Shown piece after piece: positions 22,967 to 30,261 of a DNA stretch of 64,000 nt (position 1 is the first letter of the stretch; each line of letters begins with the position of its first letter). A program made the translations under genes and the position numbers. The stretch covers positions 1 to 64,000 of the forward strand of contig JBLWGC010000051.1 in the NCBI GenBank assembly GCA_048772705.1, read 5' to 3'. The DNA is from Leidyana gryllorum EB-2025a. Taxonomy: Eukaryota; Protista; Apicomplexa. The notes below the pieces were generated by a model, which was given only the letters and a program-made list of their open reading frames with translations, ran no database searches and was not told the DNA's origin.

Positions 22967-23022
22967 CCTTCTTTGCGTTGTGTGATGAACGTTGTAATAA
23001 ATAACCCACTATTTATGGTTCA

Positions 23023-26000
23023 ATGTGCCGCTTGACGGTGAGGTCCGATATTGTAACTAAAGAGTAATAAACCCCCAGGCGATTCTCTCGACCAAGCAAC
23101 CCGTTTGCGTGGGTGATGTGGTCACCAAGCCTCGGCTGAGTGAGTGCTGTTCTCAACAAGTTATTCTTCAATTCCCGCCGCTATAGGTATTATATACCAA
23201 TCGTTCAATTGTCATGAGCGTATTCCACGAGATAGACCCCGCTGGGCCTACGAGCAGAGTACGCTCAACGGAGACGGTTTTGGAGTCGGGTGGTATGTAC
23301 CCAAAGAGCAAGCGCACCTTATTCCAAACCCGCAACGGCCGTGTGTATTCACATCCCTCAAGCCCGCTTGGGGTGATAGAAACTTGAAACAGCTCTCTGA
23401 GAATACCATCAGCCCCCTGATATTCGCTCATGTCAGGGCAGCTGGGCCGGGCTCTGGGTGAGCCGCTGAGTCTATGTCATCGCAATAATGAATTCAACAG
23501 GGCCCCCACCGAGACAAACTGCCATCCGTTTCGTTGCGGACGCTTCTTATTCATGCACAATGGCGTCATTGGCAACTGGACGAGTATCCGTCGACTGCTG
23601 TTGGCCCGCCTACAGACCCCTTTGGCGTTCAATTTCGCTATGGAGAATACGCCTATTGACAGCGTTGTGCTCTTTGCCCTCTTCCTCGAGACCCTCGATC
23701 GTGGCCGTAGGTGCTTTCCAGCCTGACGCTCTCAACTCGATTCTCCACAGCCGAGGCGGACTATTCGGCAAACGAGCTGCGAATCCGAATGCAGAGAGTT
23801 CTGGAGTGGGTGAAAGCTGTAAGCCTCCGACGCCCTCACCCTCACCTCACCATCACTCTGTCGCTCACAACAGGTTTTGGACGAACAGAAGATCGAGGAA
23901 GTATCGTACATGAACTGTATGGTCTCTGATGGGGTTGATATGGTCGCGACTCGCTATGCTGTTGGGCCCTACAGTAAACGACACAGACGCGTATCAGCAG
24001 CCCCCGATGCCGCAGTCGAATCGTATGAAGAAGTTGATCGCACACAATCGCTCTCATTGTACTTTGCAACTGGCACGCGATGGATTGAGGAATCTCCTGG
24101 CGATTTTCGGATGACACATATGGACAAAAGGAACGAAGTCTGCATCGTCACCTCCGAACCTCTGACCGAAGTCCGCGAGGAGTGGGTCCCAGTCCCCCAC
24201 AATCACCTCATCATAGTTAGTTCCAAGTGTGACGTTTTACTGCAGCCACTGGGCAGAATCGTCCAGACGGCTTCGTCTCCTCGAGGAGGGAGGAATCCGG
24301 GCAGTTTGGGTATATTGGATCATCTGGTCGCCTTGCCCCTCCGGCCACCTGATGCCACTGCTGCCATATACCGCTCACTCCTGTCGCTAGGGGCTGCGAG
24401 CTCTTATTCCCCTGCTGCTCATTCCCCCTCCTCCTTTCCAGGAGACGGATCAGCCACCGGAGGCGATGGCAGCACACGCCGATCCGTACAGTGGCCTCCC
24501 GTTTACCCGCGGGATCGCTTACACACTCAAAGTCAAGATGCCCCTGACCATTTATTGTGCCGAAGGCTGTACAAGGCTGATGGTATCCCAATACTGTGTG
24601 TTACCACCGTCGCTGTGCACAGTGCCAGTGGGCAGCCACAACGGTTACTTGTCACAGGCGATCAGGTGGGTAACATTCGGGTGTGGTCGTTGGAATCAGG
24701 GGACTGCTTGACAACCATTCACGGCCATAGAGGATCCGTGCTGGCTTTGGCGACATATACAGAGCATATAGACTGCGACAACGACGACTCGGACACGAGT
24801 GAGAGCAACAGCGGAGACAATCATGTCACTGCCTGTCTGCCGTCAAGCGGTTTCCCAACGCACACTTGGCTCTTCTCGGCCTCCGCTGATACGACAGTGG
24901 GCGTCTGGGATTTGGGTAAACTGGTGAACTGCCCTGGAGCTCAAGCACACGAGTATTTGAGTGTTCGCCTATACTTTGAGCCGCTTCAAGGGGATGTCCT
25001 GTCGCTCACAGTGACCCACGGGCCCAATAGGAAGCAGGACTGCATCTTCATGGGGTACCAATCTACAATGATAGGTTACATGAAGCTGTATTCCCTCTTC
25101 ACACGGCTGCGGGCGTGTCGACACTTTGTTCCCAATCGAAGCCCAGACGATCCTCTCTGCTCCCCCGCTTGCCGCTCGGGCCAATGTCCAATAGGAATCC
25201 ATATGACCTTTGATTACATGGGGGCCCCGCAGCTGGTCCTCTCAGCTGCGACAGAAATACTCCCAGATCCCACAGCTGAAGAGTTCTTCACACCCACCAT
25301 CATGAACGATGCTTGCGCTCAGGGGTTAGCAATGTATAACCCATCTATGAGCATCGTGACCCCAGGTGGAACCTGTGAGAGTGTCCCAAGGCCAATTCCG
25401 CCCCGTAATTCTGCCAATCGAGGCACTTCGGAGAGCCTTATGCAGCATTCAGGTTATCGTGGATCCAATCCCCACTCAATGCCAATGTTATACTCTGCTC
25501 CCTGTGGGAGCGACCTGGAAAAAGGCACTTCAGAGTGCGACACACGTGTGTGCCAAGGAGGCGGAGGCAGCACCAACCGTTTCGTCAGTGGGGTTCCAGC
25601 TCGCGAAAACTTGAAAGCTGAGAGTGATGATGTGAGCTCACATACATCTCTAAGAACCCACTGCCCGTGTACTTTGGATTGGTATTTACTGCGCCAAGAT
25701 GGACAGGAGCACCACTGCGGCTTCATCGAGGCCTTAGCCGTCGCCGGACAAGGCGACACAGTAATCAGTGGTGGTGGCGACGGCTTGGTGGTCGTCTGGC
25801 GCCGAGGCCGCCATGTGGCCACCCTTTCTGGCCACACAGGAGGTGTCCTTTGCCTCGCGGCGACTGTCCACAATGGCCACCCATTGGACGGGGTTTCCAA
25901 CGCCCCGTTGTCGTCGGAGGAAGTGCGTCGAGCCACGAGTGAGGGCATTGACCACAACACATTCTATAGCGGAGCCCGTGATAAAAGCATCCGAGTGTGG

Positions 26001-28699
26001 GATCTCCAAAGTCTGAGCTGCAAACAGGTCCTGAGAGCACATACTCAGGATGTGATGGCCCTGACGTTGACACCGCACTTCCTAATCTCTGCTTCGAATG
26101 CATGGGAAGTGTATGTCTGGAGCCGAAGATGGCACGACATATGCTATGTGCTGCACATAGACAAACCTGACCGGGGTCCCTCAGTCGACAATGGACGCTT
26201 GCACAGCACTGTAACACATCTGACAGCAATGACTGACGAGCAGCAAACCATTGTTTCTACGGGTAGCGACGGTATCGTTCGATTCTGGACAATCCCGCAG
26301 ACATCCTCCGGGGACAAAATAGTTCTCCCGTCTGATGTGAAAACAAAGGGAGGTGAAATGGTCACTCCCCCTCCCCCCATGGCTCAAGTAGCGGAGGAGG
26401 GAGAGAGTAGTTGTTGGCTGGGAGCGTTGATGGCGAGTCCCAGAACGGGAGGGTCAACACCTCAGTGTGATATCCTCACAGTTGCCGAGGGATTACTACG
26501 GGCTTTCATCCCCATCCGAAGCATCAGTGTCCAGCCAACGTTTGCCAACGAATGCTGGAGAGCAGCAACAACGCTTTGCCACTGGTTCGACGAAATCGGT
26601 GCAGAAACTCAGCTGTGCCCAGTCGGCTCGGGTTCGGCACCCATCATGCTGGCACGATTGGGCCACGACCCGAAGAAGCCCACAGTGCTTCTGTACAGTC
26701 ATTATGATGTCGTGCCGTCTGGAGAAGGCTCGACAGACGATTGCGAGTTGGATACCGCTTGCTTCCACCGGAAGTCACCGCCTAAGGGCAAGACGCACGA
26801 CTATCACTGGGCGACAGACCCCTGGACCCTCAGTACCGTGAACGGCTATTTCCACGGCAGAGGCGTGACGGACAATAAAGGACCTCTGATAGCTCAGATG
26901 CTCGCAGTCGCAGAACTTGCCAGGGGGCGATATAACAAGGCAGAATATGCTGAGGCCTTCGGTCTAAGCACAACCTCTGGCAGTAAAAAGAAAAAGCGAA
27001 AGGAGTATGGTGAAGATGTGGAACGGATAGCCTCCGTGTCTACCTGCCCGACTACCGCCGCTGCCGGCGGAGGCGCCCAAGAGATGCCTGTGAACGTTGT
27101 ATTCATCAGTGAGGGAGAAGAGGAGAATGGCAGTTTAGGATTCGATGCCTTCTTGGGCGAGAGAGAGGATATACTGCGGGATGCCAAATATGCCATCTTC
27201 ACCAACACGTATTGGCTTGATGATGAAACACCCTGTTTAGTCCACGGGATGCGAGGGGTGATCGATCTACAGGTCACAGTCAGTGGAGGGGATGATCCCT
27301 TGGGACTTCACTCAGGTATCCATGGCGGAGCAGTTGTGGAACCATTAGTGGTAAGTGAACCCAGATTGACCTACTTTCTGTGCGATTCATACCGTTCGCC
27401 GTGTGTGGTGTGTGTCTCCCGTATCTTCCAACGGCCGCCGAACACATTGAAACGATGAATACGGCAATCTATTTTGGCCTTTCAGGATGCATTGGCACTG
27501 GCAGCTGGGTTGGTGGATAATCAAGGCAACGTGCTTGTTCCGGGATTCTATGACGACGTCCTGGGTATGGCCCGCGGGGCCTCCGAGGGGGAACTATCGC
27601 CGACAGATCCACGACGACCTGATCTAACGCGGTGTTTTGATTGTTTCGATCTGGAGAAGTATCGGATTGAGACAGCAAATGCAGGATTACGTAATTTGGA
27701 TGGCAGGGACTTGCTTAGGCGACGGTAAGACGAGTATGCTAATCTATCATTAAGTTGGATTAGATGGGTAGAGCCCTCCCTATCAGTAACGGAAGTGTGG
27801 TCCTCAACGCAAACTTCCAAAGAGAACGTTGGGGGCAACTACCGTATAATACCCTCGCGGGTGGGCTTCAATGTATCAGTCCGCTTTGTGCCGAACCAAG
27901 TGAGAGCTTAGAGAGAAGTTGACTGTTAAAATTCATCGTTGTGCAGCGAGCGGACAAATTGGTGAAGCGACTCAATGCTTTACTTGAATTCGAGTTTGCC
28001 AAACGAAGAAGTCCGAATCGGTTAGAGATTAAGTTGTTGAAGTGTCACGAATGGTGGCAAGGAGACACCACGAGTGCTCTATTCCAGTAAGGTTGTCTGC
28101 TAACTGCTCTTGGGACACTGGTGATAGTGCGGCTTCTCGGGCAATGACTCGAGTGTGGGGTGCTGCTCCGATGTGTACGCGTGAAGGCGGAACAATTCCT
28201 GTCATTCAACGGGTACAGGAGAAGCTGGGTGTGTCAACGATTCAGATACCAATTGGTCAAGCATCTGATAACGCACATCTTCCCAATGAGAGGTTGCGGG
28301 TGACAAATCTCATCAATGTAAGTTCCCAATTGTCTGTCTATACATCTGTGGAGGGGGTGGTACGGGCGGATCGATGTCTTTTGTGCCACACGCTCGTACT
28401 CCGGCCACTATTTGGCTGCTGTTTGAGAGCGCTGCCGCTGGTCTGTTGATTGGTGATGCTGCTCGTACTAACGGCTCCCGGTGTATGGACTGCACTGGAT
28501 GACTCTTCGAATTGTGTTTTGGACTTGGCCCATGACTTGTGGTGACGACGATGTTTGTGGCTCTGTGTACAAGCTGAAGTTGACACTTGCTGTGATTGTA
28601 CAGGGTATCGAAGTTCTGAAGATGACTCTATGGGGTTTGGGCCACTGGAATGAATGGGACTGGGGAGCGTCCCCAACCCTACCCTTCCCAGGAGCATAG
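23023..28699 (+). CDS. Dug3-Dug2 fusion: class II glutamine amidotransferase + WD40 repeats + M20 metallopeptidase (putative glutathione gamma-glutamyl hydrolase)
   Basis: N-terminal MCRL (Ntn Cys2), KPR..IIYQSF, NGDGFGVGWY, PAWGDRNL, FAHVRAA, NCHPF, FMHNG, IVTSEPLT..REEWVPVP. WD repeats GDQVGNIRVW, SASADTTVGVWD, SGARDKSIRVWD. M20 motifs YSHYDVVP, GRGVTDNKGP, EGEEENGS, LHSGIHGG, REGGTIP, DNAHLPNE. The GATase C-terminus, WD40 and M20 N-half lie in one uninterrupted 1193-aa ORF. Confidence 0.88.
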
Positions 28700-28982
28700 T
28701 CGGTACAAACTCGGCTGCATGAGGATTCAAGTGGCTGCTGAATGGCGAGTGACACTCGTCTGTGGTTGTGTGATTGCGACCAAACTCGGTCTGATATCGT
28801 GCGAACTGCTCTTGACAGTACGCGTCCAGATCAAACGTATCCTCAGGGGATGTAGTGCAAGTCATCATTCCATCATCTGACTGCGTCATTCGATACGATT
28901 CATCGTGCTCCAACCGGTCAGTCGTCAAGTCTACGAAGGTATTCTTCGTCGGCAGTGCTTCAGACGGTGCGAAATCCAGCAT
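28338..28982 (-). CDS. Hypothetical protein with KNTF and PAM2 motifs
   Basis: ORF contains LPTKNTFVD and LNPHAAEFVP; overlaps the 3' end of the Dug fusion on the opposite strand. Confidence 0.5.
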   Translation of the reverse strand: MLDFAPSEALPTKNTFVDLTTDRLEHDESYRMTQSDDGMMTCTTSPEDTFDLDAYCQEQFARYQTEFGRNHTTTDECHSPFSSHLNPHAAEFVPTMLLGRVGLGTLPSPIHSSGPNPIESSSELRYPVQSQQVSTSACTQSHKHRRHHKSWAKSKTQFEESSSAVHTPGAVSTSSITNQQTSGSALKQQPNSGRSTSVWHKRHRSARTTPSTDV

Positions 28983-28992
28983 CCTCTCTTGT

Positions 28993-30261
28993 TTATCTGC
29001 CCTGATTCGCAAACACGCCGATCAACCACTTAAGATTTATCAGAAATTGCTTCAGCGCACTTGTCCACCTGCAGAGTCCTCTGTTGACCAACGGACCGGT
29101 GTAACTCACTCCACCTCCTCGCCAGTCTTGTATTTCAAGCTGTAACCACCAACCTTTTGACCTTGCACCCTGACCAACAATGTGTGTTCCACCCCCAACC
29201 TCACTGTATGACAGGTTCCAAGTTGGGACTACTCTTCCGTAACACTCCTACAATGTCCTGACGGAAAAACTCAAGATAAACACTTCGGCACCTACCTCAA
29301 AGATGCTCAGCAGTCCACAGAGACCCTCGTTGAAACGGGGCAAATGAAAGTACCACTGTAGGTTACTTTCCGTCAGATATAGCGGCCATTGCTGATTGGG
29401 GTCGTTCCACTTCGCCAAGTAGCTCAAGGACCCCTTCACGTAAATCCTCCCAGCACTCGGTCGGAAACCTTCCCCACCCAAAGCCACAGGGACTTCTTCT
29501 GAGGAAGTGTCCACTCTTTCTTGTTCAACCAACACCTCGTCAACCCGCCGGCACATGGTATTCAACAGGGCCGCAACCTCTCCCAGTGCAGCGTTGATCT
29601 CACTAGTTGGAACCTATGGCGGCATATACTGATGAATAAACAGGAGACAGTACCTGTAGATTGGGCAGTCGTCCCAATCGCAAGCCGTTGATGGTTCCGA
29701 GATCGCCATCTTGCCTGAACTGCTGGCTCATCTGTGAACATTAGCGTTACCATATGTAGAAGCACTCATTCAACAAATGCATCCGGGCGATGCGATTTGC
29801 TTCATTGTTCGCATCCTTAACCCAACGCTGATAGCAGTCTGTACGGCCGAACTACCCACGGCCGCTCTCACATTCAAGGCTTCAATATCGTCGGTTCGCC
29901 GTTTTGCAGCCTCCCAAGCTTGATGTTGCTCAACAACATGGCTGGTAGCACACACGTGTGCAGATGTGGAGGTTACGACATCACAATCACACGCTTACTT
30001 TATGGTGTCAACCCACAGACGGACACCGCGATTCTGAGCTTCAGTTAACTCAGTCATGGCGTTCTGCACGGTGTCGTCGGAGATTTGACGGGTTTGTGCC
30101 AGCAAACGCATTTCTTGTTGCTGGGAGCATGAATCACACAAAGGGTCATCTTCTGGAAAAGTGGGTTGATTGATGAGAATGGCGTGGCAATCACGGCAGC
30201 GCAGATCGAATTCTCTTTTGAAGATGCTCATCTCATGATCTGTACTTGGCTTATCTGTCAT
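28993..30261 (-). CDS. ATG6: Beclin-1/Atg6 (Vps30)
   Basis: Spliced motifs GTINGLRLGRLPNLQVPTSEINAALGEVAALL, KGSLSY, WPLY, FNEGL, WTSALKQFLINLKW; N-terminal CxxC...PLCDSC. Confidence 0.85.

What the first reader, a model, noticed from the sequence alone, without database searches (positions are those of the whole stretch)
23023..28699. Single-gene Dug3-Dug2 fusion: a one-polypeptide glutathione degradation complex
Seen: an N-terminal Ntn GATase II (Met-Cys-Arg start) continues in frame into WD40 repeats and an M20 peptidase. The GATase/WD40/M20 junctions lie within one uninterrupted ORF (23877-27458), so the fusion does not depend on my splice predictions. The M20 part keeps HYDV, DNKG, EEE and the C-terminal His, but has TNTYW where Dug1/CNDP2 has an Asp, as I recall for Dug2. 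Known: in yeast, Dug2 (WD40+M20) and Dug3 are separate proteins forming a GGT-independent gamma-glutamyl hydrolase, described as fungal. Inference: a Rosetta-stone fusion that lets the parasite recover cysteine from glutathione, possibly with channelling.
Basis: partly seen in the sequence, partly recalled or inferred. Interest (0 to 1): 0.82.

Follow-up and report, generated by a model that had tools for sequence, protein, structure and literature searches.

The report
Fused Dug3-Dug2 glutathione-cleaving enzyme gene
This gregarine parasite encodes, in one intact 11-exon gene, the two proteins that yeast uses as a complex to start breaking down glutathione; the same fusion occurs in many protists and algae, so a pathway that papers call fungus-specific is widespread.

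Summary
A + strand gene of 11 exons (23023-28699, 1,632 codons, ten GT-AG introns) encodes three parts in order. First is a Met-Cys-Arg class-II (Ntn) glutamine amidotransferase. Then comes a WD40 propeller. Last is an M20A peptidase-like domain. The junctions between the three parts all lie inside one 1,159-codon exon.

Every exon is colinear with a transcript-derived protein of the gregarine Blabericola. All 67 invariant columns of 34 fused homologues are kept.

The M20 part is of the Dug2 type (TNTYW and TDNKG). The Dug1/CNDP2 type has SDNYW and TDDKG.

- The fusion is not special to this parasite. It occurs in Eimeria, Cyclospora, chromerids, dinoflagellates, green, red and streptophyte algae, Euglena and an amoebozoan.
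- It is not the whole degradation pathway. A separate Dug1/CNDP2 Cys-Gly dipeptidase gene sits on another contig.

The assembly has gamma-GCS and glutathione synthetase. No GGT, ChaC or OPT transporter was detected. Turnover of the cell's own glutathione is therefore the simplest role.

No RNA run was listed for this organism. Activity is inferred, not shown.

The parts
23023..23037 (+). Exon 1: Met-Cys-Arg-Leu-Thr. Cys2 (23026-23028) is the predicted N-terminal nucleophile after Met removal.
   Evidence: Read from the sequence. The MCRLT start is shared with Vitrella, Eimeria, Chromera and P0006. It aligns to P0006 residues 1-5.
23079..23139 (+). Exon 2 (AILSTKQPVCVGDVVTKPRL + 1 nt), GATase N-terminal strand.
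   Evidence: 55% identical to P0001 residues 21-40. The split codon A|GT gives the near-invariant Ser24.
23187..23457 (+). Exon 3: GATase core with NGDGFGVGWY and FAHVRAA motifs.
   Evidence: 82% identical to Blabericola P0001 residues 42-130, E 4e-52. Invariant N43, D45, G46, H101 and R103 are kept.
23501..23706 (+). Exon 4: GATase core with NCHPF and FMHNG motifs.
   Evidence: Pfam GATase_6 1e-5. 68% identical to P0001 residues 133-197. C116, H117, H128, N129, G130 and D161 are kept.
23751..23818 (+). Exon 5: GATase helix (EADYSANELRIRMQRVLEWVKA).
   Evidence: Aligns to P0001 residues 202-219 and P0006 residues 181-194. This is the weakest exon (E 0.004).
23874..24260 (+). First part of exon 6: C-terminal third of the GATase domain (SLYFATGT, TSEPLT, VPHNH).
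   Evidence: Aligns to P0006 residues 200-309. Weak Pfam GATase_4 hit at profile positions 216-248. N212, D217, G218, S274 and E275 are kept.
24261..26468 (+). Middle of exon 6: linker helix, then a WD40 propeller (about 24600-26291) with lineage-specific loops, then the linker to M20.
   Evidence: Pfam WD40 4e-16 and many beta-propeller families. Aligns to the P0006 propeller at residues 350-680.
26469..27350 (+). End of exon 6: M20 catalytic domain, N-terminal half. Key residues: His 26700, Asp 26706, Asp 26871, Glu-Glu 27120-27125, and Asn 27204 in place of CN2 Asp195.
   Evidence: Pfam Peptidase_M20 1.6e-10. PDB CN2 5.5e-26 with alignment. Residue mapping.
27486..27724 (+). Exon 7: M20 lid (dimerisation) domain.
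   Evidence: 39% identical to P0001 residues 1271-1352, E 6e-14.
27764..27899 (+). Exon 8: M20 lid domain (RWVEPSLSVTEV...).
   Evidence: 53% identical to P0001 residues 1354-1398.
27947..28086 (+). Exon 9: end of the lid and return to the catalytic domain.
   Evidence: 47% identical to P0001 residues 1400-1444.
28128..28317 (+). Exon 10: M20 catalytic domain, C-terminal part, with REGGTIP and GQASDNAHLPNE (His codon at 28276).
   Evidence: 64% identical to P0001 residues 1446-1506, E 4e-27. H1133 and E1137 are kept.
28604..28699 (+). Exon 11: C-terminal helix (GIEVLKMTLWGLG...) and stop TAG at 28697-28699.
   Evidence: Read from the sequence. It matches GVEVLKMTLFGIG at the end of P0001.

Best explanation
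This is one intact, vertically inherited gene for a cytosolic 1,632-residue enzyme. It is the single-chain counterpart of the yeast (Dug2p-Dug3p)2 complex.

Inferred mechanism:
1. After removal of Met1, the free N-terminal Cys of the class-II (Ntn) amidotransferase domain attacks the gamma-glutamyl amide bond of glutathione, and probably of other gamma-glutamyl peptides.
2. This releases Cys-Gly. The thioester is then hydrolysed to glutamate.
3. The WD40 propeller holds the GATase domain. In yeast this contact is between two proteins; here it lies within one chain.
4. The Dug2-type M20 domain keeps four of the five CN2-type metal ligands, with Asn for Asp195. It acts as a dimerisation and scaffold module, possibly also binding substrate, and not as the dipeptidase. 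The active form would then be a homodimer.
5. Cys-Gly is cleaved by a separate Dug1/CNDP2 enzyme encoded elsewhere in the genome.

The genome makes glutathione, and no GGT or ChaC was detected. This may therefore be the organism's main route of glutathione turnover.

Shown here: gene structure, domain identity, conservation, distribution, and the separate Dug1 gene. Inferred: substrate, activity, dimer, and cellular role.
For: Gene and fusion:
- One 1,159-codon exon spans the GATase end, the WD40 repeats and the start of M20.
- All 11 exons are colinear with the transcriptome-derived Blabericola protein P0001. Exon 3 is 82% identical and exon 10 is 64% identical.
- All 67 of 67 invariant columns and 69 of 74 near-invariant columns of 34 fused homologues are kept.

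GATase identity:
- Pfam GATase_4/GATase_6 hits on the homologues P0006, P0001 and fungal P0207.
- The closest solved structures are the class-II GATase 3MDN (2.6e-29) and the gamma-glutamyl amidohydrolase EgtC (1e-14).

Dug2 identity:
- Fungal WD40+M20 Dug2-like proteins are hits along the length of the query.
- The window and all fused forms share SN[ST]YW and TDNKG with fungal Dug2. The genome's own Dug1 has SDNYW and TDDKG.

Dug1 and the rest of the pathway:
- A separate Dug1 gene is present.
- Gamma-GCS and GSH synthetase are present.
- GGT, ChaC and OPT were not detected.

Vertical descent:
- The M20 tree and the GATase tree each give a Myzozoa clade (SH-aLRT 99) with the window sister to Blabericola.

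Structure predictions on homologue P0006:
- The AF2 model of P0006 has pLDDT 84.6 and pTM 0.82, which points to a defined three-domain packing.
- The homodimer of the P0006 M20 part scored ipSAE 0.85 against a best control of 0.00. The mark was reached by 21 of 30 solved homo-pairs and 0 of 23 single chains. On eukaryotes it was reached by 17 of 29 homo-pairs and 0 of 30 single chains. Runs agree in at least 97% of contacts, and pLDDT is 90. The interface lies in lid residues 900-1060.

Yeast biochemistry:
- The (DUG2-DUG3)2 complex cleaves GSH to Glu + Cys-Gly, and (DUG1)2 cleaves Cys-Gly (PMC9804317, citing Kaur 2009 and 2012).
- The complex also cleaves gamma-Glu-Met (PMC7617739).
Against: - No RNA or protein data exist for this organism. 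No sequencing run was listed, so the splice model and the single transcript rest on homology.
- No activity was measured for any fused form in the papers searched.
- Individual exons give only weak Pfam GATase hits (1e-5 and 0.16).
- The six-frame own-genome search with PF13230 missed this very gene. 'No GGT/ChaC/OPT' is therefore weak evidence of absence.
- The dimer pass may be from memory of solved CN2/Dug1 dimers, and it was run on a homologue, not on the window's protein.
- The statements that yeast Dug2p lacks peptidase activity, binds Dug3p through its WD40 domain and dimerises through M20 come from my memory of Kaur et al. 2012 (JBC 287:8920). That paper is not held.
Confidence: 0.8

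Rival explanations
1. The enzyme is a gamma-glutamyl (or other amide) hydrolase whose main substrate is not glutathione. Candidates are gamma-glutamyl dipeptides, glutathione conjugates or an ergothioneine-type intermediate.
For: The yeast complex also cleaves gamma-Glu-Met (PMC7617739). The nearest solved characterised relative of the GATase domain is EgtC, which cleaves a gamma-glutamyl-cysteine derivative. Stand-alone bacterial relatives of about 285 aa, at 43-47% identity, have no known role. This genome carries unusual arrays of GST genes according to unchecked scan notes.
Against: The whole Dug2+Dug3 architecture and its motifs are shared with the fungal proteins whose GSH activity was shown. 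A Dug1 Cys-Gly dipeptidase and GSH synthesis genes co-occur with it.
Confidence: 0.12
2. The M20 domain is itself an active Cys-Gly dipeptidase. One chain would then carry out both steps with channelling.
For: His, Asp, Asp, Glu-Glu and the C-terminal His of the M20 active site are all kept. The predicted three-domain packing is compact, with pTM 0.82.
Against: The CN2 Asp195 ligand is Asn in at least 90% of fused forms and in every fungal Dug2-like protein checked. The window has it too. A canonical Dug1/CNDP2 gene is kept separately. From memory of Kaur 2012, yeast Dug2p has no peptidase activity.
Confidence: 0.06
3. Gene-model artefact: two neighbouring genes, or a pseudogene, read as one.
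For: No transcript data exist for this organism.
Against: The domain junctions lie inside one uninterrupted 3.5-kb exon. There are no frameshifts or stops in any exon, and all family-invariant residues are kept. Single 'complete' transcripts with the same order exist in Blabericola, Euglena and several Trinity assemblies.
Confidence: 0.02

Closest known systems
Saccharomyces cerevisiae (Dug2p-Dug3p)2 glutathione-degrading GATase complex (DUG pathway)
   Same: It has the same three modules: a class-II Ntn GATase with an N-terminal Cys, a WD40 propeller and an M20A domain. It has the same Dug2-type M20 signature (SNxYW, TDNKG). A separate Dug1 dipeptidase is also present.
   Different: Here the modules form one polypeptide in the order GATase-WD40-M20, not two proteins. 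It carries long lineage-specific loops and totals 1,632 aa, against my recollection of about 880 aa for Dug2p and 360 aa for Dug3p (untested). The host is a gregarine, not a fungus. Activity is untested.
Uncharacterised fused homologues in public databases (Blabericola P0001, Vitrella P0003, Chromera P0122, Eimeria P0004, Cyclospora P0126, Symbiodinium 'DUG2' P0146, Euglena P0149, Prototheca P0007)
   Same: Same architecture, same motifs and the same MCR start. The window branches with Blabericola inside a Myzozoa clade in both domain trees.
   Different: Only 42% identity overall to the closest one. The insert loops differ. None has been studied experimentally in the papers searched.
Dug1p / CNDP2 (CN2) Cys-Gly and non-specific dipeptidases, M20A
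   Same: The M20 part has the same fold and lid-mediated dimer. The best Foldseek match of the homologue model is yeast Dug1p 4G1P, E 3e-41.
   Different: Asp195 is replaced by Asn and Asp133 by Asn. It is fused behind a WD40 propeller and a GATase domain. The genome has its own true Dug1/CNDP2 elsewhere.
EgtC and bacterial stand-alone class-II GATases (PDB 4ZFJ, 3MDN)
   Same: Same Ntn GATase_4 fold with a Cys1 nucleophile. EgtC also hydrolyses a gamma-glutamyl-cysteine type bond.
   Different: They are stand-alone proteins of about 230-290 aa without WD40 or M20 partners. Their substrate is different or unknown.

Membership tests
Dug3-type class-II (Ntn) glutamine amidotransferase | Mature N-terminus is Cys (Met-Cys start, no presequence) | tested here: met
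   ATG TGC CGC at 23023. The MCR start is shared by fused homologues.
Dug3-type class-II (Ntn) glutamine amidotransferase | GATase_4/GATase_6 domain with conserved NGDG, HVRAA, CHPF, HNG and SEP motifs | tested here: met
   All family-invariant residues are kept. Pfam hits on single exons are below or near the cut-off but clear on the homologues. PDB 3MDN and EgtC match.
Dug3-type class-II (Ntn) glutamine amidotransferase | Works only in association with a Dug2 (WD40+M20) partner | tested here: met
   It is covalently joined to that partner inside one exon. A functional requirement is not testable here.
Dug3-type class-II (Ntn) glutamine amidotransferase | Cleaves glutathione to Glu + Cys-Gly | not testable with these tools
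   Needs an enzyme assay or yeast complementation.
Dug2 (WD40 + M20A, non-peptidase) | N-terminal WD40 propeller followed by a C-terminal M20A domain with lid | tested here: met
   Pfam WD40 and Peptidase_M20. Fungal Dug2-like proteins are hits across both parts. Exons 7-9 match the lid.
Dug2 (WD40 + M20A, non-peptidase) | Dug2-type active-site signature: Asn in place of CN2 Asp195 (SNxYW) and TDNKG in place of TDDKG | tested here: met
   The window has TNTYW and TDNKG. All 12 fungal Dug2-like proteins checked have S/A-N-x-Y-W, and 10 of them show TDNKG. The genome's own Dug1 has SDNYW and TDDKG.
Dug2 (WD40 + M20A, non-peptidase) | Homodimerises through the M20 domain | tested here: inconclusive
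   A model of the homologue P0006 residues 700-1165 x2 scored 0.85 against a best control of 0.00. The mark was reached by 21 of 30 solved homo-pairs and 0 of 23 single chains. At least 97% of contacts agree between runs, and pLDDT is 90. The pass may reflect memory of solved CN2/Dug1 dimers, and it was not run on the window's own chain.
Dug1 / CNDP2 Cys-Gly dipeptidase | Full set of M20A metal ligands including Asp195, in a stand-alone protein of about 480 aa | tested here: not met
   Asp195 is replaced by Asn, and the domain is fused. The true Dug1 of this genome is at G000:C230:307588-309141.

The most novel reading that the evidence does not exclude
The single-chain GATase-WD40-M20 enzyme is the ancestral eukaryotic form of the DUG system, and the fungal Dug2/Dug3 pair arose from it by gene fission. 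Within Apicomplexa it survives in gregarines and Eimeriidae as the only gamma-glutamyl-cleaving route of glutathione turnover. No Toxoplasma, Plasmodium or Cryptosporidium protein appeared in either long-protein search, so it may have been lost there.
Probability: 0.45. Interest if true: 0.55.

Novelty: new variant of a known kind. Interest (0 to 1): 0.45.

Why it matters
Held papers still describe DUG2/DUG3 as a fungus-specific, two-protein system (PMC9012958, PMC7617739). This gene and its many relatives show the same machinery as a single chain across alveolates, algae, Euglena and an amoebozoan.

That has three consequences:
- It widens the known reach of GGT-independent cytosolic glutathione breakdown.
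- It supports, in the Rosetta-stone sense, the yeast Dug2-Dug3 interaction.
- It offers a one-gene construct for structural and enzymatic work. No Dug2 or Dug3 structure turned up in the PDB copy searched.

For parasitology, it marks a difference in thiol metabolism. Gregarines and Eimeriidae have the fused gene. No Toxoplasma, Plasmodium or Cryptosporidium protein was listed in the searches.

The gain is moderate. Fusion of known partners is a common event, and the proteins are already in databases, though unnamed.

Tried and rejected
- RNA evidence: the look-up of sequencing runs listed no run for 23000-28720.
- Kaur et al. 2012 could not be read, by DOI or by PMC3308760.
- Two Pfam calls failed on wrong frames and were corrected.
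- A six-term paper search ranked only apicomplexan cell-biology papers and gave nothing on DUG outside fungi.
- The PF13230 search of the own genome returned nothing, even for this gene. I therefore treat the blanks for GGT, ChaC and OPT as 'not detected'.
Exons were searched one by one by reference. The compact homologue P0006 stood in for the fold and dimer jobs.
- Considered and rejected: horizontal transfer from fungi. Both domain trees follow organismal groups, and fungi form their own clade.
- Considered and rejected: a targeting presequence. It is incompatible with an N-terminal Cys nucleophile.
- The root of the M20 tree is unresolved, so fission versus repeated fusion is argued from distribution only.


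Full report
**What is in the sequence**

The + strand between 23023 and 28699 carries a multi-exon gene. Its translation begins with the last third of a class-II amidotransferase domain (EVSYMNCMVSDG, SLYFATGT, IVTSEPLT, VPHNH). It continues without a stop through WD40 repeats and into an M20 catalytic domain (YSHYDVV, GRGVTDNKG, SEGEEENGS, FTNTYW).

Pfam finds WD40 (4e-16) and Peptidase_M20 (8e-9, or 1.6e-10 on the sub-region) in this ORF. The three-domain continuity therefore does not depend on any splice call.

**Gene model**

I read the flanks by eye and by three-frame translation. The exons are:
- 23023-23037
- 23079-23139
- 23187-23457
- 23501-23706
- 23751-23818
- 23874-27350
- 27486-27724
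- 27764-27899
- 27947-28086
- 28128-28317
- 28604-28699

This gives 4,899 nt, or 1,632 codons before the TAG. The ten introns are 39-286 nt long and all are GT-AG.

Translated one by one, the exons align in order to a transcriptome-derived protein of the gregarine Blabericola migrator (P0001). Exon 3 is 82% identical, exon 4 is 68% and exon 10 is 64%. The codon split by intron 2 (A|GT) restores a near-invariant Ser.

Against an alignment of 34 fused homologues (A1), the window's exons keep 67 of 67 invariant columns and 69 of 74 near-invariant columns. The gene is intact and under the family's constraints.

Every search was exon by exon, by reference.

**Identity of the parts: GATase**

- Single exons give only weak Pfam hits (GATase_6 1e-5, GATase_4 0.16).
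- The homologues P0006, P0001 and a fungal stand-alone protein (P0207) hit GATase_4 and GATase_6 clearly.
- The nearest solved structures are a class-II GATase (3MDN, 2.6e-29) and the gamma-glutamyl amidohydrolase EgtC.
- The start Met-Cys-Arg-Leu-Thr is shared with Vitrella, Chromera, Eimeria and others.

**Identity of the parts: M20**

- The M20 part aligns to human and mouse CN2 and to yeast Dug1p.
- In that alignment the Asn of TNTYW stands opposite CN2 Asp195, and TDNKG stands opposite TDDKG.
- A motif survey shows that all fused proteins and all fungal WD40+M20 (Dug2-like) proteins checked share SN[ST]YW. Those in which the second motif was found share TDNKG.
- The CNDP2-like protein of this same genome has SDNYW and TDDKG.

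The M20 part is of the Dug2 type, not the Dug1 type.

**Distribution**

The word search with the big exon and a search scored on the GATase part but restricted to long proteins found the same GATase-WD40-M20 order in many lineages:
- Gregarine: Blabericola.
- Coccidia: Eimeria brunetti, flavescens, stiedai, maxima, magna and intestinalis, and Cyclospora.
- Chromerids: Chromera and Vitrella.
- Dinoflagellates: Symbiodinium (named DUG2 by its source), Prorocentrum, Effrenium and Amoebophrya.
- Red alga: Agarophyton.
- Green and streptophyte algae: Prototheca, Auxenochlorella, Bryopsis, Chara and Closterium.
- Others: Euglena gracilis and the amoebozoan Planoprotostelium.

Several of these are 'complete' single transcripts. 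No Toxoplasma, Plasmodium or Cryptosporidium protein was listed.

Stand-alone relatives of the GATase domain, about 285 aa and 43-47% identical, are common in bacteria and in zoopagomycete fungi.

**Trees**

Trees of the M20 part (rooted on the genome's own Dug1) and of the GATase part both recover a Myzozoa clade (SH-aLRT 99), with the window sister to Blabericola. They also recover separate green-algal and red-algal groups. The fungal rows form their own clade in each tree (99 for the Dug2-like rows; 100 for three zoopagomycete stand-alone GATases).

The two halves have therefore travelled together, and there is no sign of transfer from fungi. The deep root is unresolved. The idea that the fusion is ancestral and the fungal pair a fission rests on distribution across supergroups, and is an inference.

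**Pathway context in the same 15.5-Mb assembly**

| Component | Result |
|---|---|
| Dug1/CNDP2 gene, G000:C230:307588-309141 | present; E 2.6e-143 to 2ZOF, 1.3e-133 to yeast Dug1p 4G1P |
| ILR1-like M20D gene | present |
| Gamma-glutamylcysteine synthetase | present |
| Glutathione synthetase | present |
| GGT | not detected |
| ChaC | not detected |
| OPT transporter | not detected |

These blanks are weak. The same kind of search with PF13230 missed this very gene, because its domain is split over exons.

Taken at face value, the organism makes glutathione, and this enzyme plus Dug1 is its recognisable way of degrading it. Uptake of host glutathione has no detected carrier.

**How it most likely works**

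From held papers: in yeast, (DUG2-DUG3)2 cleaves GSH to Glu and Cys-Gly, and (DUG1)2 cleaves Cys-Gly (PMC9804317). The complex also cleaves gamma-Glu-Met (PMC7617739).

From my memory of Kaur et al. 2012, which is not held: Dug3p's GATase Cys is catalytic, Dug2p has no peptidase activity, it binds Dug3p through its WD40 domain, and it dimerises through its M20 domain.

Applied here, the free Cys1 attacks the gamma-glutamyl bond. The propeller holds the GATase domain in cis. The M20 lid makes a homodimer that corresponds to (Dug2-Dug3)2.

Two predictions on the compact homologue P0006 agree with this:
- AlphaFold2 with alignment A1 gives pLDDT 84.6 and pTM 0.82 for the whole 1,165-residue chain, which implies a defined domain packing.
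- Two copies of its M20 part dock through lid residues 900-1060. The score is 0.85 against a best control of 0.00. The mark was reached by 21 of 30 solved homo-pairs and 0 of 23 single chains. At least 97% of contacts agree between runs, and pLDDT is 90.

The dimer pass may be memory of solved CN2/Dug1 dimers. It shows likeness, not binding of this copy.

Foldseek finds Dug1p, CN2 and WD40 proteins for the separate parts. No chain covers more than about a third of the model, and sequence searches found no solved Dug2 or Dug3.

An N-terminal nucleophile leaves no room for a targeting peptide, so the enzyme should be cytosolic.

**Novelty and verdict**

The interpretation needs trimming:
- The fusion is the first step only, with Dug1 separate.
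- It is a widespread, database-visible but unstudied architecture, not a peculiarity of this parasite.

In the library searched, papers mention DUG2/DUG3 almost only in fungi and call the pathway fungus-specific. One Euglena paper notes 'degradosome' orthologues without comment on fusion. No paper describing the fused form was found.

I rate it a new variant of a known kind, of moderate interest.

No RNA run was listed for this organism, so expression as one message is inferred from orthologous transcripts. Other notes of this scan call the genome a gregarine, which agrees with my own best hit.

Noticed in passing
G000:C230:307588-309141 (L002:1111-2664): An intronless 518-codon ORF encoding a canonical Dug1/CNDP2 dipeptidase (SDNYW, TDDKG). 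E 2.6e-143 to mouse CN2 and 1.3e-133 to yeast Dug1p.
   Followed up: yes
whole assembly G000: Gamma-GCS (C230:1626625-1627728) and glutathione synthetase (C104:285802-287226, split by introns) are present. GGT, ChaC and OPT-family transporter models gave no hit. These blanks are weak, because exon-split genes can be missed.
   Followed up: partly
window 28341-29012 (-): A 224-codon minus-strand ORF overlaps intron 10 and the last exon of the Dug gene and carries a PAM2 (PABP-binding) motif hit (E 2.9e-5). This may be a convergent overlapping gene. Another scan note flags the same overlap.
   Followed up: partly
window 23038-23078 versus P0001 residues 6-20: The Blabericola transcript has 15 extra residues (VRQKTTHEGYDTYTQ) exactly where the window has its 41-nt intron 1. 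The insert starts with Val (GTN) and ends with Gln, as an in-frame retained intron would. This suggests a conserved intron right after codon 5.
   Followed up: no
P0007, P0008, P0009, P0163 (green algae): These database gene models start at MAF/MAY, where other fused forms read MCRLMAY. A tiny first exon encoding the catalytic Cys has probably been missed in those annotations.
   Followed up: no
P0218, P0235, P0245, P0280, P0298 (bacteria): Stand-alone class-II GATases of about 285 aa from Planctomycetes, Rhodospirillales, Gemmatimonadetes and Acidobacteria are 43-47% identical to the eukaryotic Dug3-type domain. Some are auto-named EgtC. Their substrate is unknown.
   Followed up: partly
G000:C35:167751-169184 (L001:1111-2544): A third M20 gene of the genome, of the ILR1/M20D amidohydrolase type (E 4e-64 to Arabidopsis ILL2, PDB 1XMB).
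   Followed up: partly
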